Source: Asterias rubens (Eukaryota). From it: a stretch of 64,000 bases of DNA. Positions 8,700-57,062 of the stretch are shown here, piece by piece. The stretch spans positions 17,112,001 through 17,176,000 of the forward strand of contig NC_047069.1 in NCBI RefSeq assembly GCF_902459465.1, in the 5' to 3' direction. Position numbers and translations under genes: made by a program. How positions within the stretch are numbered: the stretch's first letter is position 1; the number at the start of each line of letters is the position of its first letter. The notes beneath the pieces are model-generated. The model searched no databases. It was not told the origin of the DNA and was given only the letters and a program-made list of their open reading frames with translations.

Positions 8700-10440
8700 T
8701 GGAATAATATAGGGCAGAAGGTATTTTATGTTGACCTGATGTAGTCAACTGAATTTGCCTGAATTTATTTTAAAATTTGTAAATCTTGGTTTAGCTTTCA
8801 TTGTTCTTGTGAAAATCTTTCAGGTCTTTATGTAAGTTAAGTTAATGTGTCCTAAAATATCTACATACATTTCTATGCAAGAATGGTATTCATTCTACTT
8901 GAATATGATATCAGATTTGTTTTGCCCTTGGGAAAATATGATTTTTTTTTCTTCAAAATAAATAACCTGAAAAGTCTGTGTAAGCCAACACCATTGGCAT
9001 TTGGTTCATCCCTTGTACACCAAGGGCCAAATACAATGCCTGCAGTCTGTCTATGTACATTGTATGTGAGTGGTGTGCTATGCAGGCTAGATGTAGCCAA
9101 CTGAGTGTGCCATAACTATTTGATGGACACCAAACCCCACTTTAGTGTAAGCACTGTACCTGTCATTGAGAATATAGTGGGAATTCTAATTTGGCTCATA
9201 CCCAACTCATACATGTAGACAGATACATGTACATGTGCAAGACACACATTTTTCTTCAAACGTATCTGTAATTACAGAATGCTTGTAACTTGGCTTCATA
9301 GATTTAACCGATCCAGCAAGCAATCAAAATCAGAGATAAAATTGAAAGTTCAAAATAAAATTGTTGACAATGCAAAAGGGACACATCCCTGGTAATCTAT
9401 TTTGGCTAGATGCAGTCAATTGAGTTTACCAGAAGTGAGAAACCGAATTCCAATTAAGACCCATTATACCTGTACCAATAATGATGTACTGTAGTGGTAG
9501 TTCTAATTCAGCTAGATGTAGCTGATTGAGACTGCCTTGCTTATTTCAGCCACTCTTGTCATAAGGATGTGTAGTTTAAAGATGTAGCCAATTGAGTTTA
9601 CCAGAAGTGAGATACCAAATTCAACTAAAGACCCACTGCACCAATAATGCTGTATTGTAGTGGTAGTTCAAAGTTCAGCTAGATGAAGCTGATTGAGACT
9701 GCCATGCTTATTTCAGCCACTCTTGTCATAAGGATGTGTAGTTTATAGACACAACATCATCCTGAAATAGCAGGCCATCAACTCAGACATGCCCAGATTG
9801 TGGGCACCACCGTGTTCCCTTCTGCGATGTGGTATGCTAGTTTGGCCAGGTGTGGCTGAATGAGAATGCCAGAAAACATAAAGAAATTGCTTGCTGGATG
9901 CTAGACTAGTGAAGTATCTATAAATGACAAGCTAGTTTGGCTAAATGTAGCTGCATGAGCGTGTCATTAAAGATAAGGACATCAATGTCCATTAATTTGC
10001 ATCATTTAAGATTTAAGAAGGTACAGGTGCAATAACCAATTATCACTCAAAAAATGAAATCTTTTTTGGGACCAGATGAAATTGGGTTTGAATTCCTTGT
10101 TCATAAAACATTGGCTTGCAAGACACTTGATTTGAATAACTTTTTCATTAGGTTTCACACAAACTCAAATTACAAGTGCAAACTCTTAGAACTTTGCGTG
10201 CCTTTCAACCTGATTTTATCTAAACATGATCTGAAATATTTCAAAAAGTCCAATGAGAGCCAAATCAAGATTTCAAGAGGGCTTAGACGCTCCCATTCAT
10301 CATACAATTGAAGAAGACTTGGTTATTTTTGACTGAGGCAATTATATGCCTTCCAAGGATACGATTGTGGATCCAGCGGCAATTTATTCTTAGTTGAAGG
10401 AATAAGTGTCGTTGAATCTTGCTTAGGCACATTAATCAGT
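8700..10440. repeat. Non-autonomous repeat module with GCTAGATGTAGC motif array (copy 2); TTAA-flanked end
   Basis: Seven to eight motif copies between ~8736 and ~9960; ends ggaataagtgtcgttgaatcttgcttaggcacattaa, like 62290-62326. Another partial end at ~10742-10830. Confidence 0.75.
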
Positions 10441-10523
10441 AAAATGTATGGGTGCTCGGCAGACTCCTTTTGATCTGCCATCAATTGCACTCAATATTTT
10501 GAGTAGGAGCACCAGTGGTGGGA

Positions 10524-10699
10524 CAGGCCTGATACTTCACGGAGGCAACGAAGGCAATTGCCTCCGTTGCCCCTGGTCATTGCCTTGGTGCCCGTGAAAT
10601 GCCACAGTAGAAATTTACAATCCCTTATAGGTTGCCCTTTACCTAGGAGAAAATGCCTTGGTCCCCTTGCCCTTTCAAAAAAGGAAGCATACAGGCCTG
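10524..10699. mobile_element. MITE with CAGGCCTG termini (hAT-like)
   Basis: Starts caggcctga and ends tacaggcctg; gtggga is duplicated on both flanks (6 bp, or 8 bp tggtggga if the ends are shifted). Confidence 0.7.
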
Positions 10700-11789
10700 G
10701 TGGGATCAACGAAATTTAAGGAGTGGTTTACTGTGAGATATTTAACAATTCCTGACTGAGGCAATGATAGGCTTTCCAACAGTCCGATATGATTGTGGAT
10801 CCAGTAGCAACATATTCCATAGTTTACTGGAAATAATTAACAAATATATATGCAAGTTCAACTGATGAGTCATGAATTTGACGAAAGGGCAATTAGCAGC
10901 ATTCAAGGTTAACAACAAAAAAACAGACAATTTATGGCATTCTTGTCATATTTTTCCATATTTTTCAAACTGAAAAAAAAACTACCACTCAATAAGTTTG
11001 TATAATTTGAAGAAATTGTAGCAGCCCAAAATTTAAAGGGCTTAACAAGCTGCTGATTGGCCTCTTGAACAGTGTATACTGATGTTCAATTTATTTGTTT
11101 AACTAAGTTAATAACAAACCTTATTTCTATGGAAAGTGCAAAATATGGAGACTGCAAGCTTAGACTGATGAGGGAAACCTCTTGCCCAGTACAGTGGATG
11201 TAATACCTGCTGAAACCAATTGGCAGCAAAGTGACTGTTTAAACTCTGTAATAATTGATACCAGAGCTTAGTGACATATTTCAGTGTAGGTCAAAATATT
11301 GTATAAATGCAATTTACATAATCCCCCCCCCCCTATCACTTCTGCAAAAATGAATAATTTATTGTTGACCAGTGGTTTTTATAGTAATGTTTTCTCCACT
11401 TATCGTACATGAAGGAAACAAAATGTAAGACATCCTAATAATTTTTTTTTAATTTGTAAAATTTGTAAAAGTGTACACAGTGCATTTTTCCAATGATGTT
11501 TATCATCCATTTTCATGATGTGTATCGTCCGTTTTCATGATGTTTAGGGACCCAAGACAGGGTCAAAGGTGAAGAAGAGGTTTCATCATTCCAAAGGTGC
11601 TGTTACTCATCAATGGTTTGAAAGACTTTAAATCAGATAGGAGCATTTAGACCAAGAGGATTACACTGAGAGGTGCAATCGATCCAGACTTGAAGGTATT
11701 CGGGGATTACGATTCATATGAAAACTTTTATTTTTAGCAAGTAGATACACACTGTTATCACAAACATATTGATACCTGACCATGCAATG

Positions 11790-12129
11790 CCTCAAATCCT
11801 ATATTTTATTTTCTACTTTATTATATGATTAAAAAATATATCAATGGGTGCGTTCGTTTAGCTTCCCTGGGTCACCCCCCGTGTGAGGTTTTTTTTTTTT
11901 CCCAGGACGAATGTGGGTTATTATTTGCACACGTTCGTCCTGGAAAAAAAAAACCCACACACCGGGGTCGACCCAGGGAAGCTAAACGAACGCACCCATT
12001 ATAAACCAAAAGGGAAACTCACTGGGTAAATTTTTATGTGATATTTTGGACTTGTAAAAAGAATTGACTAGAGTGGGATTTGAACCAACGACCTCCAGAT
12101 TAATGTGCCGGCGCTCTACCAACTGAGCT
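11790..12129 (-). mobile_element. tRNA-derived SINE, interrupted by a MITE; truncated second copy at ~12150-12310
   Basis: Minus-strand head agctcagttggtagagcg (A box) ... ggttcaaatccc (B box) at 12068-12129; the body is duplicated downstream. Confidence 0.7.
11846..11997. mobile_element. MITE with long TIRs (Harbinger-like)
   Basis: gggtgcgttcgtttagcttccctgggtc ... gacccagggaagctaaacgaacgcaccc; the neighbouring SINE copy shows the empty site. Confidence 0.8.
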
Positions 12130-12919
12130 TTCCCCGAATGATACCTCGCAATACAATGTCTTAAGTCCTATATTTTATTTGTTACTTTATTATAAATAGA
12201 AAAAAAATAAATACCAATATTAACCACAAGGGAAACTGACTGGGTAAATTTTTATATGATTTTTTGGCTTGGACAAAGAATTGATTAGAGTGGAATTCGA
12301 ACCAACCTCATCCCTTAATCAAATAATCTACATGAAGCCAGTTGATCTTACATACATACTTCTTTTAGGAATCTTAAGTTCCATTGTTTTTTCTAACATT
12401 GTCACCAATCTGAACTTGGAAGTAGAGGTTTTGCTTTAACAAATTGTGGCATAATAGAATTATTCAAATTTGCTTCCAAGATAAATATTTTGTATTTTTT
12501 TAAATTAATTAAGAATTATTTCACGAAATGATTGCATCAGATAAAAGGTTGACACTTTAAAAAAATTATCCGAGTTTGCATTAACATCTTTATAATTGGT
12601 TTATTAGCGAAATTGTTCTTTAAAAAAAATTCAGTATGTGTTAAAAGAAAGCAGGCACACCTCGTGATTTATTTTTATAAAAATTAGGATTGTGGGCGAT
12701 AGCGGTGTGTGGAATAGCGGTGTGTGTGGGGCTGCGTACAATGTACAGGCGCTTAGTGTGTGCGTGAGAGTGCGGTGTGCTTTTCTTTTTAGAGTCAGTC
12801 GGGGGGACTGGTTGTATCGCATTCGGGCGGCTGAGGTTTATCCTTGCTCTATGGTTTTAGCTAGAGTAATTGTCTACACAGCCTTGATCAAGGCTATGTT
12901 TGAACAGATATTCATAAAT

Positions 12920-13260
12920 ACCTAAGACAATTTATCCATTCTGATTGGTCAAGAGGGCATCACGAGGTGTTGTTTGATGCACCTGTGATGATGCACCTGT
13001 GCGTATAAGACAGTTTCTTCATTCCATTATTTTGGTCGAGAGCAACGGCTGAAACAGTTGTGCCACATCACGCGTTACATGCGACGCGCACAGCATCTCC
13101 TTATAAGGAGTTGTTTACCCGAGGACCTAACCATTTTGGTAAAATTATCAAGAACCAGGCCTCGTTGGGGCATCTTTTTACACAAGCTCACAGCTTCAAA
13201 GTGAAATAATTTGTTTAAACGCCACAAGAGTGATTACCAAATGTATACCGTTCCTTTAAA
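12920..13260. mobile_element. Short interspersed non-autonomous element with a TTAA/AGG-type end (Kolobok-like)
   Basis: Ends gtataccgttcct+ttaa; resemblance to such elements is from memory only. Confidence 0.3.
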
Positions 13261-13439
13261 CCACATTCTTTAAAGGGTTGTCACTATAAAGACTATTTTA
13301 GTGTCTACAAGTTTGTTAGTGTTAAAGATTCAAAAGTTTATTAATAGCTTATTATTATTATTATTATTTATTTATGTTTTCCCCTCTTCTTTTATTTTAT
13401 TTTATTTTTTAGAATTTGCAACTTTTGAAAGTTATGCAA

Positions 13440-13740
13440 ATATTATTCTTGCTACATACTAACTAAATAAGGCATATGGATGATGAAAGGATGATGCAGT
13501 TGCAGAGTTGAGATAAAAACTATTACTGTGGAGCCTTCCCCAGAGGTAAGGAAGATAAGGTACGCTGAATATCATCAACTGAGAAGTTAATACTAGACAG
13601 AGCTGGAATGGGAAAATCACATGTGGGTCTTGACAAACGGACATCAGCAGAAAAAACTAAAGCAAAATAAGTATTAAAAGCACAAGCTATTTCATGTGGG
13701 TTGACTAGTGTTTGGGCACCATGTTTAAAAGACAATGGGT
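13440..13740 (-). pseudogene. Non-LTR retrotransposon (CR1/L2-type) ORF2 fragment, linker before the RT
   Basis: IACAFNTYFALVFS...LSSINFSVDDIQRTLSSLPLGKAP matches the A..FN.YF..VF...L..L...KA.G pattern. Confidence 0.6.
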
Positions 13741-15389
13741 AGGTGATCGTTTTCTACTATCTCGATCTTTACAAACATTTACCTGAAAGGAGTACAGATT
13801 GCTGTCCTGGTTAGTCAGTTTAAAATGTCACTACATAAAGTTATGGAGATTGTTTTTGTTTTGTTTGGATACATTGGAATAAATGCAAACAGAACTGGCA
13901 CAAAGAATCTGACTTGTTCATATTTAATTTAACAACAGAATCTCAAAATCATAGTTTTAGTACAAATTTATTGCATATTATTGTTATGCAAATGGTGGTC
14001 AAATGCATATTGTTATGCAAATGGTGATGGTCGAATATACCTTTGTTTGACACTGATAAAAAACAAGTGAGTTTTTATTTTGCGCATCATAATGATTATG
14101 TAAACACCTCTTACTGGACTTTTCATGTAAGCTCAATAATCATTTTGATGTCTAGACTTGCTTTTTTAAGTGTTTCCTTCCACTTAAGTGTTTCCTTTAA
14201 GCCTATCTGTGTTCCTTGTTCAGCGCCTTGTATCCTTTGGCAATTTGGCGCTTTCTAAATACTGTTTTATTATTATTGAGTCGAACGTCAGGCCATTAAC
14301 TATTTTTTGCATTTTTACCATCAGTCCATTTGGTTGGTAATTGTTTGCAACAGCTAATTCTGTTTTCTCCCTTTTATTCTTGTCCCTTTTCCCGTTATTT
14401 TCTGTTTTTAGTCCAGTCTCTTGTCGTCAAAACAAGGCCTGGATCTGGATCGATACTGCATGCAATCAGTACTGTAATACCTAACACAAAAATATAAAGC
14501 AACTGCTGATCGGGATTTGCCTCCGTTTCCTTAATTAGTTTTGTATGGTTACTTGGTTTGATTGTAATTGTATGACTATATTTATTGTACTTGTGAAATG
14601 GAAATGGATTGTGATGGAAGTGAATTTTTTGAGAAGATCGATCGTGATGCCCAACACCACTAAACATATCTAGCGCCCTCATACGGTAGCCTCATCAACA
14701 ATTCACTCATAGGTTGGTATCCAGACGACTTGAGAGTCACTCCTATGCAAATAACCATAATATTTAGAGGCACCCGACTAAATACAATGTTAGGCACGCG
14801 CACATGTGGCATCCTGCAGTTTGCGTTCGTTACGAATTGACGTGATTTGTCGATTGCCTGTGCAGTGTTAGTGTTGGTTTGTACGACACCAAAAGCCATA
14901 ACTTCTAAAATGGCTGCCTCTCTTCACGATAAAGATAGTTGAGTGAGGGGTGACGAACCGGTAACTGGAGTCTGGCCCTGGAACTTGGAAGAAGATTCAC
15001 ACAGTCACACAGAACAGAAGCGGCGACCACCCTTCGTCGTGCCCGCCCTGGAACGGGATGTTTCACACGAATCAGTTGCTTCATTATTTTTCGAGATGTC
15101 CGCGAAGGGGAATTTCCGAAACGGTGATCCAGTGACCACCCAGCAATATATGTAGTTTCTGACTGAATTTTCGTCTGACCAGTGACTAGTTGGGTAAGTC
15201 ATATTTACCAGTTTACACATTCAAGACATTGCTTGACTTGATATGTGTTTTATTATTTGTCTTCTCTTTTGTTTTGTATTGTATTTCCGTTGTTTGTGTA
15301 GTGCCAGTTGAAGCACTGCCCACTGCCGGGAGGACTGTATATACCATGCCCGATATGGGTCATAAACTCAGAGGCATGCTCTGTGTTAG

Positions 15390-26301: not shown

Positions 26302-28438
26302 TCAACTTTCATGAGCAATTTTAGAGCATGTATGTTTGTTGTGGCCTTTTACACCACACAAACTACAAGTAACGCTGAATTTCATCAAACGTTCACATTC
26401 CTCAAGATCTTCAATGCGGTTTTGTTTCTCCATTATTTGTTTTAAGGCAATCTCCTTATGATTAGTGCCTCGAAAAAACCAGCGTGTTACACAGTCATTC
26501 AGTTTTTCAAGTCCCTGCTGGCTGAAAAGTGCGATATTACCATTCAGTCGGATTGATTCCCCAATATGATTTGCCAGTATATGCATATAAGGAGTCGCAT
26601 CTTTGGTGGGGTATATGTTACAGAACAGTTCTAACCAAGATCTTGCACTACATTCAAATGCTTTCAAAGCAACTTCATTTTGATTAGACAAACCTGATAT
26701 TTCTGTTATCAAAAGTTTGAAGTTACTCCAAAGTTGTTTCAGACTAGGAAGTTTGGTGAATGATGTACCAGCCAAGAAGTAGTCTAAATCGATTGAATTG
26801 AGAATCCGCCAGTGCTCTGGTCCAGTGAAGTCTCTGTAGGTTAATTTACCAGATCTATCAACTATAAAACACCACTCGATGTTCATTGACTGTACAAAGG
26901 TTTCAAACTTGTCTATGTTTGGAGATTGTTTAGCATGTGCAATTCTTACTTCATTATCATACTCCCTAAGGATTGATATCAAATGCCCAACAAGTTGATC
27001 AGAGATTCTCAAAAAGAGATGCAATGTGTCTGGAACAATGCGTATTATAGGTATTGAGGTAAAAAGGGGCGGATTTGAACAATTTGTACTTGTTCTTTTT
27101 TTGCCTCGCATATTGTGTGATTGATTCAATAGTTCGAGCACCACTGGCTTGGTTTATCATTGACCACTGCTTTCTGTGGTCCCATCTATCAGATTTTGAA
27201 CAATGACACCACAGGCAGCTGTATGTTGAGCTACAAGCATCCAGTCCTGTCATAACATTCAAGAACTTCAAATCTCCACCAAGGAAAAATACAATATCAA
27301 ATACTCTACCATTGATGACAATAGTCTGCATTTCTGATACTTCACAAAGGATAGGGTTTAACGCATCTTTTAGTGACTGGTACTTTTCCCTGACTTTGAG
27401 GATTGAAAGTATGTGGTTACCTGTTACACTCTTACAGTTGGCTTCATTCATAACACTAAACACAATATTAACAACATGTATTCTCTTCCCCAAGCATGTA
27501 CCATCTCCAAACAGTTTAACTTTAATAACAGAATCTGTCATTGGGTTATTATTGGTCAGTTTATTGATCCTAGTTGTTAAACGTTCTCTCAATGATTGAA
27601 AAACACCTATGCCTCCAGGTAATTCCTGAATGTTGTAACTTGCATTGAGTTGGTTGGCATACAACTTCACTGAACGTAATTTTGGAAACTTTGCTGAAGA
27701 AAGAGCCAATTCATGGTACGTTTTGTCAGAAATACCATATCGATCTTTGAGATACAATGCCTTTTTGTCACTGATGTTCAAGGTACCTTTTCCTGTGACC
27801 ATGATGTTTATCATTTTTTTACCTTTTGTTTCAATGGAAATTCTAACAGGCTCATCTCCATCAGAACCAAAGAGTGGAAGTGCCTGCAGGATTTGCTTAA
27901 ATCCTTTCAATCTGTGCCTCCTTTGTGTTCGTTTACTAGCATTTGGTTGCAAGAACACTCCATTTTTGTTTTTCCGTTTGTTTTTGTGACTTTGAAGCTC
28001 TTTTTCAGCTTCTAATCTGAGAGATATTTGAGTCTGTAGGTCTCTTTCAAGTTTGGACTTCAACGCCCCTGGGCTTCTGAAAGTAAGTCTCAGTTTATAT
28101 GAACTTGTTCTCCACTTTGTAAGTAGTAGGTCTCTCGATTTTCCACCTGCAGATCTCTTTGGCTTTGCTTTACTGAGCATGTGCTTGGCTTTGGATTGAA
28201 GTGTCTTGAGGAGGGGTTTCACAAGTAGCTGCGGCATGTCAACATCATTTTCCATGCAAATGAACTCTAAAATTGATGTCAAATTGTCTGGTTCATTAAT
28301 TGGAGATTGTAGACCTTTAAAGAGCTCATATAACACATAGTTGTTGATAGATGCACACCATTCATTAACAGGTTTGGCAATAATGGGAAGGGGCATAAAA
28401 TCTAAAGCCAACAACACTGCAAATGTTGAAAATGCCAT
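26302..28438 (-). mobile_element. Transib/RAG1-core-like DDE transposase, copy A (one frameshift near 27081)
   Basis: Ordered motifs KVKLFGDG, LGGDLKFL, CLWC, PDTLHLFLR, TPYMHILANH and FSQQGLEKLND parallel RAG1 KESCDG, GYDEKL, CTLC, DALH, NYFHKTLAH and SEGNES. C-terminal knuckle CSLCGVKGHNKHTC. Confidence 0.75.
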
Positions 28439-33771: not shown

Positions 33772-35956
33772 TCAATCCAGGGCTCCTTTCTGTAGTAAAA
33801 GAGGAACATTTTGGCTTACAGAGCAAGATGGCTTGTAATGTCCTTCATTTCCACACTTAGTACAGTGTGCTGTGTTTGACTTTCTATGACAAGATGGGTA
33901 CAGATAAACAATTCTGTTGGCCTTTTGAATGATCTGTTCCAGGGCTTGTAAGTTTGATATTTTGTGATTTGAGCCTCGAAAATAACTCTTTGTAATCTGG
34001 TCATTCAGTTTTTCAAAACTCTGTTGTGAAAATCGGTTCAGGGAGCCATGGTTTGTTAGCACTGCAGCAACATGTTTTACCATGACATGCATATAATATG
34101 TGATGTCCCTTTTCTGGTAAACAGTGGAATATAACTTAACCCATGCTTTTGCTTCGTTCTGAAATTTCAAAATTCCATTTACATCCAAGTCCTGTTTCAT
34201 TTGCTCCATTAATTTAGGAAAGTCATGCCATAATTTTCAATGTCACTCAGCTTTTTATGCCATGGCATGAGGTTTTTTAGGTTGATTTGGAATTGAATTG
34301 TTTTATGTTCAGGACCTGTGAAATCTCGATATTCAAGCAATCCGGTTTTGTCGGTAAAGCAGGTCCATTTAATACCAATGCCGGTGATGAATAATTCAAA
34401 CTTTGCAAGATTCTGCTGCTGCTTGTCATTAGTTTTAGAATTTTTGATTATATTATCCTGGGTCTTCAATTCGAGAATTAATTTTCGAATGAGCTGATCT
34501 GAAATTCGAAGATATAAATGAAGTGTATCCATAACAACATTGCTGTAGTCAATAGAGAACATCGGTTGGTTAACACAAGCAAAGAACTTTAATCTGCTTT
34601 TACCAGGCATCTTTGCAAGTTTGCGGGTTTCTTCCAAACTTCTTAATTGACAATCAGCTTCCACATCAAACAACAGTATTTACTTGAACAAGCACCAATT
34701 CCCATCATTTCATTCATAAATTTTAAATCTGCACAAAAGCAAAACTGAAGAGTCAATGTTATCGCCTTAAAATCAAATGTATTTGTACTGGAAATGAAAT
34801 TTATTGTATCATCAAGTACAGGTTTCAGCAGATGGTATTTTTCTGGACATGTTGTGATGGCTAGTACGTGATCAGTTGAAACAAAGTTTCCAATTATAAC
34901 CACAAATCCAATGTTGGTGACTTTTAGTCGTTTCCCACAGGTAGTTCCATCCCCAGTTATTTTTACTTTGACAATGTCTTTGTCTTTCAGTGACAGTTCT
35001 TGGTGCAAAGCCTGCATATGCTCCAGTGCCAAAAAGAGCTTGTCCTCCAACCTCTCTGTCACGGCATTTGACTCTTCAAGTTTTTGAACTTTAAACATTG
35101 AATTTATTGCTTTGGCTCTCGTCTGTATTGACAACAAGGGTGGCATCAACCCATTGCTTTCCAATGCATATTCACGATAAGTCACATCGGGAACACAGTG
35201 TCTGTCTTTCAAAAACAATGACTTATCAACAGACAATTTAGTGTGCTCACATTCATTTTCAATTGAGCCGGCCCTGTGTATATTTCCGTACTTGTCTCCA
35301 AGAACTAGGTGTTTAGGAAGAAATCCTTCCTGGAGAAGAAAATCCCATGTAACATTCACTTCATTTTGTAACTGCTGTTTTTGTTTGGATTTCCATTGCC
35401 TTGAATACGTTCCCTTAGATTTCACACTACGCTTTGTTCCTACCCTCCTCTTAATGATCCTGGAGAGCAAAGTGTGGGCTTTCTTAGTTTGTTTTTTGCA
35501 TTTCTTGGCTTCATTACTGACCTTTTTAGCATGTTCTTCCGCAATCTTCCTTTTTTTCCATTCATTTTCAATCTCATGCAGAATTTTTCTTTTTGCACCA
35601 CAAAGTTTAAGTTTATAAATTTGTTCTTTGAATGCCGACACTTGCCTGCCTCCCTGGTTTAGCACAACTCGAAATTTACCAATCAATTTCTTAAGTTTAG
35701 AACGAAGGGCATTAACTGCCCGAGTAAGATGGACATATGACAGATCAATCTTGTTGCTTGCACACAGGTTTTCTAAGACTGATTTGGCAGCTGACTCGGT
35801 GCGAAGTGCATGTCCACTAGATTTTGCTAGTTCATGAAGAGCAAAATTGCTTACTTCAATTACCCAATCATCATTTGGATTTGACAGAGCCAAGTTTTTT
35901 ATCAAAACCATTGACAGTAAAACAAACAGCACAAACCAAAACTTAACAAGTGCCAT
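33772..35956 (-). pseudogene. Transib/RAG1-core-like DDE transposase, copy B (at least two lesions)
   Basis: KVKITGDGT, CADLKFM, MDTLHLYLRISDQL, RDFTGPEH, YYMHVMVKH, FSQQSFEKLND, CTKCGNEGHYKPSC. Confidence 0.75.
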
Positions 35957-51300: not shown

Positions 51301-52162
51301 GGTTGCTGTTTGATAGGACATCATTTCGCACTGTTGATGATGTGAGAACTGCAGCCGGGACATTACTAAGTCTTGAAGACAAGACACTGAGATCTACCCT
51401 CAGAAGTTGGCATAAATCGCATTTCATCTTCGGTTTGGATACCAGCAAAGAGCACTTTCTATGCCTGATGGTCCGATATGGGTGAATTTGGAATGTATCC
51501 CTGCCAGTAATGGTAACTGGGATTTGACCAGCCGAACCTTCCTTCGATTTTACTAAAAGCGGATAGTCACCGTTTCCCGTGCAAACGTCATTCTCGCAGA
51601 TTATTCTTACCACACCTTCAACATCTGCATACCCTAATGATGCCGGAACATCCACAAACAAAGAACAACCTGAACCTGTTACATCGAATCCACACACATC
51701 AACCCTCCAAGAAACATCATTGAATATACTCAACTCCACTTCAGGGTAGCCACTCTCCCCGAACTTCATGACTTTCAACCTGTCGGGACCACGCCATGTC
51801 ATGCACCCATGTTGACTGGCCAATTCGATGACCCTGTTGCAAATTGAAGAGAGATCATCAAGTGAGAGATGGACAACAGCACAGCCTTGTGAACACTCAT
51901 GTTCAAAAAAGGTAGCAACCTTGATGTTGCATGAAGTTTGCTTTTGGAGTTTTAAAGCTTTATGCCACAGGTCTAGCTTCTTGAAGCAGTTATGGCAGAG
52001 AAATGGGGGATGGGTGCCAAGGACATCCTGACTGACATCCAAATCCAAGGCCTGAAGTATAACATCTCTATACTTTTCTTTATTGTGGGGTTTTCTCCTA
52101 TGCAGACCAGCGGCTCCCTTCTCTCCACATAGCCTGCAAACATCCCGTAGACATTCAGCCAT
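48386..52162 (-). CDS. P-element/THAP9-type transposase with a RAG1-N-terminal-like zinc domain; 5 exons (52162-~50330, 50070-49909, 49736-49547, 49141-49009, 48630-~48386); 1-nt frameshift in a T7 run at 49640-49646
   Basis: N-terminus CRLCG...DVSQDVLGTHPPFLCHNC. Catalytic FDEMKIK, SDGASAN and QDPLE. Splicing gives RNLH|FQKQDIKW, MATQ|VLS, RFK|WLQ and RIT(V)NSF. The 3' end is cut by the Harbinger TIR. Confidence 0.85.
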
Positions 52163-53149
52163 GGTTCAGACCATCACAACTTCTTCCTTGCAGACCATAG
52201 AGTCCTTTCTCTATGTTAAAAAAAGCTGAATATTGGAAAAAGCAAAATTGAAAACTATAAATACAAATGAGATGAGATAAAAATAGATGATAAACAATTT
52301 GGAAAATTCTGACATAAGCAATATTTACTTGAAAGGGAGCCCTACCACTTCCAGAAAATTGAAGATAATAATACTAATTAATTCAATTATTAATTAAGAA
52401 TTAAAAATTAACGATTAATTAAATTATAAACAAGGATAGGTCCTTGAAGTAAGTGGCTGCAGTTTCTACACTTGTGGTTACTTGGCTCAGTTAAATAAAA
52501 ATAAAAAAATGTTACAAAAAATTTAAACCAAGGTGTTGTTGAATCATGATGACAAACGAACATCAACTCTATGCCTATTTTTTTTTTACATCATGTAAAT
52601 GATACAACGAATTAAAAATCCAGGTAGCCTATATAGCATGCATGACAAACTGTGTGTTTAAAAAGCCTTCCAAGGCGTTTTCATGCAGTATAATTTCTGA
52701 AGATTCTATTTTATCTGTCAATTTTATTTTCATATTAACATAATATTTTTTGCTAAACACCACCCCTGTTTTCATACCGAAACATCAAGCGACCCAGTTT
52801 GTGTGTGCACAGCCCGGTCGGCTGAATATTTTGTGCGCATGTGTAACCTGCCTAGTAATAGGAAGTCAAATTGTAACACAATGGGAATGGCAAAAATGGC
52901 TCTTGAAAAACTCATGAGTTACATCTCCAAACAATGGAATGGTAATAAGGGTAGCGCCAAAAAAGAAAAATTTAAATTAGTAGGCGTGGAGGGAGGTGCA
53001 GGGTACCTTATCCTTCCCCCTACACAGTAATCTATACCATTAAATGTTACAGGTAACATTATCTTTGGCCATGATTCAAAGCATAGAATAAGCAATAAAC
53101 AGTTTCACAAACCGCAAATTCCTCAAGTGGTTTTGGTACTTTTCACGAC

Positions 53150-53510
53150 TGGGAGCACTGGGTTGTAGCCTTGCATATAACATTGTTCTGCGTAGCAAAT
53201 GTCTGCTCACAACTGAAGGTGTTATCGGATTCTTTTAGATGATCATTTGGGTTATAGAGAAGCTTACAATTTGGATCAACATGGTTGCGAAGATGCAGTC
53301 TGTCGGTGCACTTGTCTACGGATAACCACATGTCGCACCATGGGGAAGGTAGAGGAAGAAGCTTTCTTGCAACACACATGTTATCAACATGACACATGTT
53401 GTCGTATACGATAGGCAGTGAACACCATTCACTTGGAGGCAGTGCGGTCAAATGTATTCTGAGCCATGCAAGGAGGATCAGAAAAACTTGAGAAGGTGAT
53501 TCAGAGCTAC
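53150..53510 (-). pseudogene. KDZ (Kyakuja-Dileera-Zisupton)-type transposase fragment
   Basis: SESPSQV, YDNMCH, DRLHLRNHVD..C, NTFSCEQTF. Confidence 0.7.
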
Positions 53511-54309
53511 AAATAAAAAAAGCCACAATTAATAAAACCAAACACAAACAAAAACTCTGCCGCAGACATCAAGTAAAAGTGTATTTTGAATTGTTTTTAA
53601 TCTGCCGATACAAGGCGCTCTTACATTTGGTGACATCATTTTTATTAAAACGAGAGCTTTTCCCGATCTTTGCAAAACTTGTATTCTTCAATGGTACAGC
53701 ATCAAAAGGTGTAAATCAAACCAAAAAGGCCATTAAATAACACTTTTCCAAAGTATTTTACAGGTACTTTCAGTTTAAATAGGTCAAAGGTCAACAGAAG
53801 GTCACCGACATATCCATTTTTGTGATGTATGTCCAGCCCTTTCATATGATGTATAGATTGTCAAAATGGCTGATGTGGTTGATTGAGGAAATAGGAATTT
53901 ATACATTTTGACGACTGTAAAAGAGATTACTAAACCAAAAGGAAAATGTATGTGGAAAACGCCTTTAACACAGACTAGCGCAATCACTGTAGCGTGACTA
54001 TGCACTGCATACTACATGTGTTGTACATGGACATGTAAAATCTTTTTGCACGACCAATGGGGGAAATTTGTAGTTCTTTAGACATGAATTTTTTTAATGT
54101 TCAACACCCATTTTAAACCGGAAGACAAGGTCAAAATGGGGTCAAGTCTGTAAGTATGGGCAACTGAAAATATTAAAAACCTGTATTAATTTTAAATCTG
54201 AATGGTTAGTTTGAACCTAAAGTGTGATTATTAGACCTTGACAGATGGTCTTCTATTACAGTGAGTTCAACATCATTGACAAAATGTGATTAGGTCAAAT
54301 TAAGTCATT

Positions 54310-55360
54310 TAAACAGCTTCGTCCTTGTAGAGACATACATCTTCTTGGTTTAGATGGGTCGAGCGATATACTTTACGAAGAAAGAAAAAAAATTCAAAAT
54401 TTCCTTTAACTTCTGTTCCTATCCTCATCAGGAATCAAAGCAAGGAAATTGTCAACCTTGGTCTGGTTAAACAGGTCACGAGCAAAGTTGCCTGGCATCA
54501 TTAACTTGGGCACTAACCCAATCGTCTCCATTAAGTGATCGTTAAACTTCTTCTCTGCATCATCAAACATGGGTTTGAAGTCTCGAGTGGTGTCCCAGCT
54601 TTGGAAGCAGGCAATTTCACATATTATGACTTTCTTGAAGAAATTACCCAAATTGATGTCGGCATGGGTTGCATCCAGGAGCTTGTGTTTGGGGTGAGAC
54701 CTAAGAACTGGGTAAGACTGTACACCCCTGGCAACTTCTGACAGCTCAGCAGCTGAAACATTTTCAGGGTTGACCTGGAGGTATTGGGCAGTGGCTTTTG
54801 TTTCTTCATAGCTTCGTGAAATGCAGAAAGTGCCCAACTAGCTCTTCGCCGTCTCCTTTCTTCTATGTTGTAGAGTGCAGACGTACCTTGATCCACTCCC
54901 CTGTAAACTAAACTGCCCTCTGCCCGGTCCAGCTTCTCGTCGATCATGCTATTGAAGAACTTCTGCTTATGTTTCCTCCATACAGAATAAATATTCACTG
55001 AAAGCTCTTTTCCGTAAAGCACCTCCTGATCATGCTCCATGCCTTCAAGTAGTACAACAGCAGACGATCTGTTGTTCTCATCCCCTATTGCCTCAATGAG
55101 GGGCCGAGTTATGAAAGTGGAATCAGGTTTATCGGGCTCATACACCGTTACTCTCTCCCCATCCTTCTCCACCTCCCACTTGATGATCGCAAAGGCTGCC
55201 CAGAAGGCCTTGTCTGGCAATAGACGATCCCTCGCTGTCTTGATGATGGAAACAACTCCCATTCCATGTGCCCCGTCCTTCACAGTTGTGAGGATACAGT
55301 GATCTTCTTCAGGGTTCAGTCCTGCCTTGTTCATGCCCTCAATATTAAGTACACTGGGCT
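54310..55360 (-). pseudogene. RAG1L: RAG1-like (RAG1L) transposase core fragment, decayed
   Basis: IEGM...TTVKDGAHGMGVVS (RAG1 ILEGM...VVVKESCDGMGDVS), PDKAF, VYEPDKP.S, IGDENN, MIDEKL, GSRYVCTL (other frame), LDATHADIN, PKLMMPGNFARDLF, LIPDE, LKEILNFF..LRKVYRS. Frameshifts; the region with the third catalytic residue is missing. Confidence 0.85.
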
Positions 55361-55637
55361 TGGCTGTACAGGATCCACAGGGGGATGGACCTGCTGAGCA
55401 TAGTCAACTCAATTCAATAACTTATTTGTCCATTAAAAAGATAAAAACGGAAAAATTTACATGTCAAAACATTGAAAAAAGCTCCAAGGCAGAAACAAAT
55501 ACAGAAATATGTATAAAACTATGATTTAAACATACCCAGCATAGATATGTCTTTGTTCTGGTCGGCAAGACAAAGGGGCACTACTGGAGCCACAGCTTTG
55601 AGAAGGTCCATCGCTTCGCAATGAAGAACTCTGGATC

Positions 55638-55657
55638 ATAATAATAATAATAATAAC

Positions 55658-55703
<46 letters not shown>
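55638..55703. repeat. (AAT)n microsatellite, the 3' tail of the L2 element
   Basis: Direct reading; follows ggcgcattataaatg on the minus strand. Confidence 0.9.
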
Positions 55704-55704
<1 letters not shown>

Positions 55705-57062
55705 ATTTATAATGCGCCATCTATCTAGTGTACAAGACCGAAGCGCAGAACAAAAAAAACAATACATACAACAAAAAAGAAATGTAGAACATAATAATAA
55801 AAATTATACAATGAATAATCTACTGTCTACTGTCAAGACATGTAACGAGCTAAGTGTAAGAGGATTCAAATAAATGAGTTTTAAGCAAGTTTTTAAACAA
55901 TGGAAGAGAACTACAGCACCTGATGTTATTAGGTAAAGCGTTCCAAAGTTTAGTAGCACAAGCGGAAAAGGCACGATCGCCATACGATGAGGAAGTTCTA
56001 GGAATAGTTAAAAGGGACTTAGCAGAAGAACGAAGAGTGCGAGAGGGGGCATAAGGTACAAGGAGATTTGCAATATAAGACGGAGTCATGCCGAACTGAG
56101 ATTTAAATGCAATAAGTAGAATTTTGAATTGAATTCGTTGTCGAATGGGTAGCCAGTGAAGTTCCTGCAATATAGGTGTAATATGATCATGTTTTTTAGA
56201 TTTTGTTAAAACACGAGCGGCAGCATTTTGTAAAAGTTGTAGTTTGTGGAGCTGGTGTTTGGTAATAGGGAATTACCATTGTCAAGGCGAGAAGTGACCA
56301 AAGAATGTATGATAGTAGCAGCAGTTTTATGTGATAAGGTTTTTCGAATGGTATTAACAGTTCTTAAGTAATAGTATGTCGATTGACAGATTCTGCTGAC
56401 ATGTTTATCCATGGATAGTGTGTTATCAAAAATAACTCCCAAATTACACGCACAAGGTGAGGCGTGAATAGATGTCTGGGAGTTATAATGAGAAATTCAG
56501 TTTTATCATCATTTAGTTTTAGCTTGTTAATTGTCATCCACGACTTAATCTCAGATATGCAGGCTTTGGCACACTGGCGAGCCGATTCCTCACTATTGGG
56601 TATGTTTAAATCAAATGGTAAATAGAGCTGTGTGTCATCCGCATAGGCATGTACCCGCAAGCCATGTTTACGAGCAATATTGGCAATTGGGCTAGCATAG
56701 ATTGTAAAAAGCAACTGCCCCAGAACTGATCCTTGGGGCACGCCGTAAGGGAGTGGATCAAAGTCAGACAGGACACTAGCAATGTTCACTGACTGGGTCC
56801 TGTTACTGAGATATGATTGTAGCCACTTCAGAGCTGAGCCCTTGACACCAATTGATGCAATGCGAGAATAAAGTACGTCATGGTCAATGGTGTCAAAGGC
56901 TGTGGAAAGATCAAGAAGAATAAGAAATACACCAAATTTATCATCCAGTTCACATAAAATATCATTTTGTACCCTCAATAAAGCTGTTTCTGTACTGTGG
57001 AATTTTCTGTAAGCTGATTGAAAGTGTTCATATAGGTTGTGAGAAGATAAAAGATAAAACAA
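55640..57062 (-). mobile_element. 5'-truncated L2/CR1-clade LINE (RT domain and 3' end)
   Basis: QSAYRKFHSTETAL, LDLSTAFDTIDH, GVPQGSVLG, YADDTQLY, LHWLPIRQRI.FK; (TAT)n tail. Confidence 0.92.

What the first reader, a model, noticed from the sequence alone, without database searches (positions are those of the whole stretch)
54310..55630. RAG1L transposase fossil
About 330 codons align motif by motif with the RAG1 core, from the ILEGM region through KDGAxGMGxVS, DEKL, the zinc-binding CTL, DATH and GNFAR to LRKVYRS. The first catalytic Asp is mutated to His and the distal catalytic region is deleted. A weak PLCLA/RTKTYL match at ~55540-55600 may be a nonamer-binding/dimerisation-domain remnant cut by the L2 insertion. 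The KDGADG-type and LDATHADI motifs differ from vertebrate RAG1, so the copy may inform RAGL family diversity. No RAG2L or TIR was found in the window.
Basis: partly seen in the sequence, partly recalled or inferred. Interest (0 to 1): 0.72.

Follow-up and report, generated by a model that had tools for sequence, protein, structure and literature searches.

The report
Decayed RAG1-like transposase fragment, starfish
This is a dead 1-kb internal piece of a starfish RAG1-like (family B) transposase gene, an ordinary fossil of a known kind, but tracing its relatives turned up full-length copies in Asterias that still look able to jump.

Summary
On the minus strand, 55341 to 54306 (1,036 bp, about 345 codons) is RAG1-core coding sequence. 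It matches amphioxus RAG1L (PDB 6b40) at E 5e-24 and 1.5e-26, against about 1e-9 for vertebrate RAG1. It is 85-87% identical in DNA to the intact RAG1L genes of Asterias rubens and A. amurensis.

It lies wholly inside exon 3, at residues 391-735 of 847. It carries:
- a 5-bp insertion and two 1-bp deletions;
- TAG and TAA stops;
- His in place of the first catalytic Asp;
- Gln in place of the second zinc Cys.

The C-terminal catalytic Glu and ZnH2 region are missing.

The stretch 55342-55630 is not RAG1L, so the proposed nonamer-binding remnant is not supported. The window holds no RAG2L and no family TIR. A tree places the fragment as sister to Asterias RAG1L, inside family B with ProtoRAG and apart from RAG1/RAGL-A. 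Starfish RAGL fossils are already published, so the fossil is a new member of a known kind.

One by-product lies outside the window. The Asterias source genes sit in three 11.7-12.9 kb elements. Each has CACAGCG... TIRs, a perfect 5-bp TSD and open RAG1L and RAG2L. I found no paper describing this.

This scan had earlier notes on Transib and Chapaev relics in this genome, but none on a RAG1L+RAG2L element.

The parts
54306..55341 (-). RAG1L (family B) fossil fragment. It corresponds to residues 391-735 of the 847-aa Asterias RAG1L: the end of pre-RNase H, then RNase H, ZnC2 and the start of ZnH2. All of it lies inside exon 3.
   Evidence: blastn gives 87.0% to L003:12491-13523 and 85.2% to L004:10354-11386 over 1,038 columns. 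Alignment A3, exon map, coordinates.
55266..55268 (-). CAT (His) where intact Asterias and Patiria copies have GAT, the first catalytic Asp (the Asp that aligns with mouse RAG1 'CDGMG').
54939..54941 (-). Second catalytic Asp retained (GAC, in MIDEKL).
54910..54914 (-). 5-bp insertion (AGTTT on the coding strand) that shifts the frame.
   Evidence: Alignment A3.
54868..54870 (-). Second zinc-binding Cys of CTLC replaced by Gln (CAA). The first Cys, at 54877-54879, is retained.
54838..54840 (-). In-frame TAG where the intact genes have GAG (Glu 557).
54391..54416 (-). Two 1-bp deletions, between 54416/54415 and between 54392/54391. Each shifts the frame.
54309..54311 (-). TAA where the intact genes have AAG (Lys 734). 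Homology ends 3 bp further on.
55342..55637 (.). It includes a short high-copy repeat at about 55409-55480.
   Evidence: No alignment above shuffles. Contig depth of 200-680 against about 5 nearby.
55638..55703 (-). (TTA)n microsatellite on the minus strand, read as the 3' tail of the neighbouring LINE (inferred).
   Evidence: Sequence read directly.
56364..57062 (-). Reverse-transcriptase ORF of a non-LTR retrotransposon upstream of the fossil. The clade was not determined.
   Evidence: Pfam RVT_1, E 1.9e-22.

Best explanation
The stretch is a dead internal remnant of the RAG1L gene of a family-B RAG-like (RAGL-B) DNA transposon. This is the starfish lineage that Kapitonov and Koonin called TransibSU. 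An older copy of the element was inserted here. It lost everything except about 1 kb of exon 3 through deletions and nearby insertions, and it has since drifted. It encodes nothing functional.

Shown:
- homology, extent and lesions;
- family placement;
- absence of RAG2L, TIRs and the rest of RAG1L;
- non-syntenic position;
- single-copy status.

Inferred:
- that the source was a transposon insertion rather than another kind of duplication;
- that the flanks were lost by deletion;
- that the window comes from Asterias rubens or a very close relative.
For: - **Family.** The best matches are RAG1L 6b40, far ahead of vertebrate RAG1. The PDB search returned no non-RAG1/RAG1L chain apart from one chance kinase hit at E 0.03, so no Transib chain appeared. 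In the tree the fragment is sister to the three Asterias RAG1L proteins (100/94*), then Patiria, then a sea urchin. All of these sit in a group with Branchiostoma RAG1L (93/93). The clade holding turtle RAG1 and a Ptychodera RAG1L is separate (96/95*).
- **Decay.** There are three indels, two stops, Asp to His and Cys to Gln.
- **Truncation.** Nothing of residues 1-390 or 736-847 is found at E up to 0.01 anywhere in the window. The only exception is a 25-34% identical N-terminal zinc-domain match that belongs to another element.
- **Not the host locus.** No RAG2L, PRP18 or RRM neighbours are present.
- **The source really is a transposon.** Asterias RAG1L+RAG2L pairs lie in 11.7-12.9 kb units at three unrelated sites. 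They share sharp ends, have 19-bp TIRs that begin CACAGCGAAA, and carry perfect 5-bp TSDs: TCGCG, CCTAG and CTGAG.
- **Another fossil exists.** A. rubens holds a younger truncated copy (L006, 92-95% identity).
- **Not amplified.** Contig depth over the fragment is like the single-copy flanks.
- **Age.** A contig of a related organism (about 93% identical) crosses the 55341 boundary, so this truncation predates that split (record 6).
- **Selection.** A parsimony count gives a window-branch dN/dS of about 0.21, against 0.18 on the gene branch. Most of the 13-15% divergence therefore built up while the ancestor was still a selected coding sequence. The neutral phase has been short.
Against: - No TIR, TSD or non-coding arm of the element is left at this site, so insertion by transposition cannot be shown directly here.
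- Both ends fall inside exon 3 next to unrelated sequence. A captured or filler fragment would look the same.
- The dN/dS estimate is rough. Thirty ambiguous codons were skipped, and the outgroup is saturated at silent sites.
- Organism names of the sequencing runs are coded, so the species is only inferred. The basis is the 85-87% match to Asterias and a TE of more than 6 kb shared with an A. rubens locus at 90-98% identity.
Confidence: 0.8

Rival explanations
1. The 1-kb piece never was a full insertion. It was copied from a RAGL element into this site as filler DNA during double-strand-break repair, or it was picked up and dropped by another mobile element.
For: - Both ends lie inside exon 3, and the sequence immediately next to them is unrelated.
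- Short high-copy repeats lie within 70-200 bp on both sides.
- The window is packed with other transposons.
Against: - The depth over the fragment is single-copy, so it is not carried by an amplified element.
- Contigs of a related organism break exactly at 54306. One 97%-identical contig continues for 368 letters unlike the window. That fits a longer copy there and a later deletion here (records 1 and 2), although I could not read those letters.
Confidence: 0.12
2. It is a decayed segmental duplicate of a domesticated host RAG1L gene, not a transposon relic.
For: Published work treats echinoderm RAG1L-RAG2L pairs as possibly domesticated and without TIRs (10.1101/2023.08.20.553239, PMC4411706).
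Against: - The nearest intact genes sit in TIR- and TSD-bounded units at three unrelated sites.
- The window shares no flanking gene with those loci.
Confidence: 0.05
3. It is part of a working gene, either an exapted exon or a protein-coding remnant.
For: - ORFs of 236 and 143 codons survive.
- There is a GT...AG-like pair upstream, at about 55537 and 55395.
Against: - Three frameshifts and two stops, with loss of a catalytic Asp and a zinc Cys.
- The putative upstream 'exon' has no homology.
- In Asterias the whole region is one exon.
- No run on record as RNA holds the stretch.
Confidence: 0.02
4. It is a plain Transib transposase or an unrelated protein.
For: None beyond the general RAG1/Transib kinship.
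Against. The fragment is 78-85% identical in protein to annotated Asterias RAG1L, which is paired with a Kelch+PHD RAG2L.
Confidence: 0.01

Closest known systems
Asterias RAG1L genes (A. amurensis XP_071810411.1 and XP_071807748.1; A. rubens XP_033635628.1)
   Same: - 85-87% DNA identity and 78-85% protein identity over residues 391-735.
- Same motifs.
- Sister position in the tree.
   Different: Those genes are open three-exon genes. They are paired with RAG2L and bounded by TIRs and TSDs. The window copy is a truncated, frameshifted piece with none of that.
TransibSU-1_PM fossil RAG transposons of the bat star Patiria miniata (Kapitonov and Koonin 2015, PMC4411706; Morales Poole et al. 2017, 10.1101/100735)
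   Same: - The same kind of object: a fossil RAG1L copy in a starfish.
- The Patiria locus L001 is a frameshifted RAG1L, 69.5% identical in DNA.
- L001 carries the same 13-bp TIR (CACAGCGAAAAAT) as the Asterias elements.
   Different: The Patiria copy keeps the N-terminal exons, the C-terminal catalytic region and both TIRs. The window copy keeps only 1 kb.
Amphioxus ProtoRAG RAG1L (BbRAG1L, PDB 6b40)
   Same: - Family B.
- Best solved-structure match, at E 5e-24 and 1.5e-26.
- Shares KDGADGMGDVS-type and DATH.DIN motifs.
   Different: About 38% identity to the Branchiostoma lanceolatum RAG1L. ProtoRAG is an active element with its own TIRs.
Vertebrate RAG1 and RAGL-A
   Same: Same core fold and motif order (Pfam PF12940).
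   Different: E is only about 1e-9. The tree separates the clade holding turtle RAG1 from the family-B group.

Membership tests
RAG1/RAG1L core (Pfam PF12940) | Significant sequence match to the RAG1 recombinase core, with motifs in the right order. | tested here: met
   29.4 and 41.2 bits against a cutoff of 25. PDB RAG1L and RAG1 hits.
RAGL family B (ProtoRAG and echinoderm RAG1L) | Groups with family-B RAG1L rather than with RAG1/RAGL-A in a tree. | tested here: met
   Starred nesting inside the starfish and sea-urchin RAG1L clade. That clade groups with Branchiostoma RAG1L (93/93). The clade holding turtle RAG1 is separate (96/95*). The family labels A and B were inferred from named members, not taken from published reference sets.
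Functional RAG1L transposase | Intact DDE catalytic triad. | tested here: not met
   The first Asp is His, the second Asp is kept, and the Glu region is absent.
Functional RAG1L transposase | Uninterrupted reading frame and the zinc-binding C2H2 site. | tested here: not met
   Three indels and two stops. CTLC has become CTLQ. Both His residues lie beyond the truncation.
RAGL transposon (complete element) | Convergent RAG2L (Kelch + PHD) gene next to RAG1L. | tested here: not met
   No match in the window to Asterias RAG2L by tblastx or tblastn.
RAGL transposon (complete element) | CAC-initiated terminal inverted repeats and a 5-bp target-site duplication. | tested here: not met
   The family TIR gives 7 hits at 3 mismatches or fewer, against 7.8 expected by chance, and none lies near the fragment. 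The feature is met in the related Asterias loci L003, L004 and L005.
Transib proper | Single-gene element whose transposase is closest to Transib transposases. | tested here: not met
   The closest relatives are RAG2L-paired RAG1L genes.

The most novel reading that the evidence does not exclude
The fossil is an early casualty of a RAGL-B transposon family that is still whole, and has moved recently, in Asterias. Three full-length copies were found, two in A. amurensis and one in A. rubens, of 11.7-12.9 kb each.
- They have 19-bp CACAGCGAAA... TIRs and perfect 5-bp TSDs.
- RAG1L and RAG2L are open and under purifying selection (dN/dS 0.07 between the A. amurensis and A. rubens copies over the aligned RAG1L core).
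- The flanks are unrelated.
- The two A. amurensis copies are 98.3-98.9% identical.

If this is unpublished, it would be the first candidate transposition-competent RAG-like transposon in an echinoderm. The 2023 MBE paper says none was known. It would also give a second native RAG1L/RAG2L/TIR system, beside amphioxus ProtoRAG, for biochemical study.
Probability: 0.55. Interest if true: 0.72.

Novelty: new member of a known kind. Interest (0 to 1): 0.4.

Why it matters
On its own the fragment only adds one more dated relic to the already published picture of RAG-like transposon fossils in starfish.

Its value is as a pointer. It shows that this genome has taken insertions of the family over a long period: this copy at 85-87% identity, a copy at 92-95% identity on another chromosome, and an intact copy. 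It also led to TIR- and TSD-bounded full-length elements in Asterias.

The RAG field currently describes echinoderm RAG1L-RAG2L pairs as TIR-less and possibly domesticated. If the Asterias elements are confirmed as mobile, that picture changes. Questions about how RAG transposition was tamed could then be tested in a second invertebrate system.

Tried and rejected
- **Upstream exon and intron.** I looked at the GT at about 55537 and the AG at about 55395, with the ORF starting MDLLKAV.... Rejected: there is no homology, and in Asterias the whole matched region lies inside exon 3.
- **Nonamer-binding or dimerisation remnant at 55540-55600.** There is no hit even at E 10-20.
- **Link to the RAG1 N-terminal-like zinc domain at 52165-51875.** Rejected as part of this copy. 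It is only 25-34% identical, against about 80% for the core. It also lies on the C-terminal side, and it belongs to the P-element-like transposase noted earlier.
- **Synteny with the intact RAG1L-RAG2L locus.** None found.
- **Other pieces of the element in the window.** None by blastn at E 1e-6.
- **Family TIR in the window.** Chance level only.
- **Transib outgroup from the PDB.** The lowest-scoring library hits (P0112, P0141) still match RAG1L and RAG1 only, so the tree is unrooted.
- **Expression.** No holder is on record as RNA. The one run guessed to be RNA holds only diverged contigs, so nothing can be said.
- **Two starting hits gave no usable context.** The contig of P0001 could not be fetched because the file was too large. 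The Diadema locus showed only its own RAG1L fragment gene and one short DNA match to the fossil.

Full report
**What is there.** Read on the minus strand, the region holds ORFs of 236 and 143 codons (54624-55334 and 54406-54837) and a 39-codon ORF. The first two hit Pfam RAG1 (PF12940) at E 3e-07 and 8e-11, on model positions 213-339 and 368-500. Against solved structures the best match by far is amphioxus RAG1L (6b40), at E 5e-24 and 1.5e-26. Vertebrate RAG1 chains follow at about 1e-9 to 1e-10. Apart from one chance kinase hit at E 0.03, no chain of another protein family appears.

**Relatives and host.** The word search found a 222-aa Patiria miniata protein (76% identity) and other echinoderm fragments. 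Because that search cannot see full-length kin of a short query, I ran the profile search. It returned 305 proteins at E of 0.001 or better. Cluster look-ups named the top ones as 'V(D)J recombination-activating protein 1-like' of Asterias rubens, A. amurensis, Diadema setosum, Amphiura filiformis, Branchiostoma lanceolatum and Ptychodera flava, with turtle RAG1 further down.

The window fragment is 78-85% identical in protein to Asterias RAG1L. In DNA it is 87.0% identical to A. amurensis and 85.2% identical to A. rubens over 1,038 aligned columns. An earlier scan note says the genome is a starfish. A TE of more than 6 kb is shared with an A. rubens locus at 90-98% identity. Together with the sequencing-run results, this makes A. 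rubens or a very close relative likely. Run organisms are coded, so the species remains an inference.

**Exact anatomy.** Homology runs from 55341 to 54306. Asterias RAG1L has three exons. The fragment lies wholly inside exon 3 and equals residues 391-735 of 847. Relative to the intact genes it has:
- a 5-bp insertion at 54910-54914;
- TAG for Glu at 54838-54840;
- 1-bp deletions at 54416/54415 and 54392/54391;
- TAA for Lys at 54309-54311;
- CAT (His) for the first catalytic Asp at 55266-55268;
- Gln for the second Cys of CTLC at 54868-54870.

The second catalytic Asp is kept. The catalytic Glu and the two zinc His residues lie beyond the 3' break.

Upstream, 55344-55640 aligns to the upstream RAG1L region no better than shuffled sequence, and the same is true downstream. 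Permissive tblastn finds nothing there.

A LINE lies upstream. It has an RVT_1 ORF at 56364-57062 and a (TTA)n tail at about 55638-55703. About 295 bp of unrelated sequence separates it from the fossil, so it cannot be said to have cut the gene.

**Family placement.** I built a maximum-likelihood tree (LG+C20, 42 rows, 348 columns). The window copy was read through with X at every break. The tree puts it sister to the three Asterias proteins (100/94*), then the Patiria pseudogene (99/95*), then an unnamed protein from an ENA assembly, then Diadema. This echinoderm clade groups with Branchiostoma RAG1L (93/93). Turtle RAG1 with a Ptychodera RAG1L, and a second Amphiura RAG1L, fall in a separate clade (96/95*).

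This is the published family B versus family A split (10.1101/2023.08.20.553239; PMC7204232). The tree is unrooted, and I assigned the family names from named members.

**Context.** The window has no RAG2L, no PRP18 or RRM neighbours of the intact locus, no other piece of the element and no family TIR above chance. The RAG1 N-terminal-like match at 52165-51875 is only 25-34% identical and lies on the wrong side. It belongs to the P-element-like transposase noted earlier.

Contigs from other runs were laid on the stretch.
- They are near-identical in two coded organisms.
- In a third organism a contig about 93% identical crosses the 55341 junction, so that truncation is old.
- Other contigs, 86-90% identical, stop exactly at 55341 or 54306. 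These are the paralogous gene.
- A 97%-identical contig and a flank contig both break at 54306 and continue with unlike letters. This hints that the related species keeps more of the copy there. I could not read those letters.
- Depth over the fragment is single-copy. Only about 54100-54150 and about 55409-55480 are high-copy.

**How it evolved.**
- Pairwise dN/dS is 0.068 between the A. amurensis and A. rubens genes.
- It is 0.13-0.16 between the fossil and those genes.
- A parsimony count gives about 0.21 on the window branch and 0.18 on the gene branch, which are not distinguishable (Fisher p = 0.65).

This estimate is rough. It suggests that the copy descends from a once-selected coding lineage that split from today's Asterias elements before the two species split (dS 0.43-0.57 against 0.17). 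The copy seems to have been drifting for only a small part of that time.

**Where the source genes live (outside the window).** In A. amurensis the two RAG1L genes lie 11 Mb apart on one chromosome. Each has a convergent Kelch+PHD gene. A. rubens has the same pair.

The three loci share a unit with sharp ends and unrelated flanks:
- L003, 8473-20330 (11,858 bp);
- L005, 9489-22357 (12,869 bp, including a 1,025-bp insertion);
- L004, 6364-18025 (11,662 bp).

L003 and L005 are 98.3-98.9% identical. Both ends begin CACAGCGAAA[T/A]ATC[C/A]CCCA in inverted orientation. Each copy is flanked by a perfect 5-bp duplication: TCGCG, CCTAG or CTGAG. All three RAG1L exons, and the 292-codon last exon of RAG2L, are open in all three copies.

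The Patiria pseudogene locus carries the same 13-bp TIR at both ends. That matches the '13-bp identical TIRs' of TransibSU-1_PM (PMC4411706). A. rubens also has a younger truncated copy, L006.

[quoted passage not shown] My literature searches found no later report. The library lacks most subscription journals, and I did not open any paper's supplementary files, so priority is not settled.

**Verdict.** The finding is real and correctly interpreted. As a fossil it is ordinary, because starfish RAGL fossils are already published (PMC4411706; 10.1101/100735). The best explanation is a decayed internal remnant of an old RAGL-B insertion (confidence 0.8). A captured or filler fragment is the main rival (0.12). 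The more interesting result is the by-product: apparently intact, recently mobile RAGL-B elements in Asterias.

Noticed in passing
L003:8473-20330, L005:9489-22357 (A. amurensis CP134953.1); L004:6364-18025 (A. rubens LR699102.1): Three full-length RAGL-B elements of 11.7-12.9 kb. Each has 19-bp TIRs starting CACAGCGAAA, a perfect 5-bp TSD (TCGCG, CCTAG, CTGAG), unrelated flanks, and open RAG1L and RAG2L. The two A. amurensis copies are 98.3-98.9% identical. I found no paper describing this. A 2023 paper says no intact RAGL element capable of transposition was known in echinoderms.
   Followed up: partly
L006:6944-10908 (A. rubens LR699099.1): A second, younger RAG1L fossil. It is 92-95% identical to the intact elements, truncated at both ends, and has a 404-bp internal deletion. 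NCBI annotates a 177-aa C-terminal product from it.
   Followed up: partly
L001:4089-13876 (Patiria miniata JADOBP010000017.1): A frameshifted RAG1L copy without RAG2L. It is bounded by the same 13-bp TIR (CACAGCGAAAAAT) as the Asterias elements, and its flanking 5-mers do not match. It is probably the TransibSU-1_PM copy of Kapitonov and Koonin 2015.
   Followed up: partly
window 51875-52165 (-): A RAG1 N-terminal zinc-domain-like stretch, 25-34% identical to residues about 10-100 of several RAG1L proteins (E 1e-5 to 4e-6), at the start of the P-element-like transposase noted by another agent. It recalls the published N-RAG-TP elements (from memory, not checked).
   Followed up: partly
window 53143-53547 (-): A 134-codon ORF with a Cys/His-rich pattern (...YDNMCHVDNMC...RLHLRNHVDPNC...) and no Pfam hit. 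It may be a remnant of another DNA-transposon transposase.
   Followed up: no
window 8965-15386: A large repeat, collinear over more than 6 kb and 90-98% identical to L006:13294-19559, next to a piggyBac-type (DDE_Tnp_1_7) gene in A. rubens. It is a young TE family shared with that genome.
   Followed up: no
window 26320-27448 and 33811-34197 (-): Weak matches (20-30% identity) of the RAG1/RAG1L C-terminal region to two other Transib- or Chapaev-like transposases in the window. They are distinct from the RAG1L fossil.
   Followed up: no
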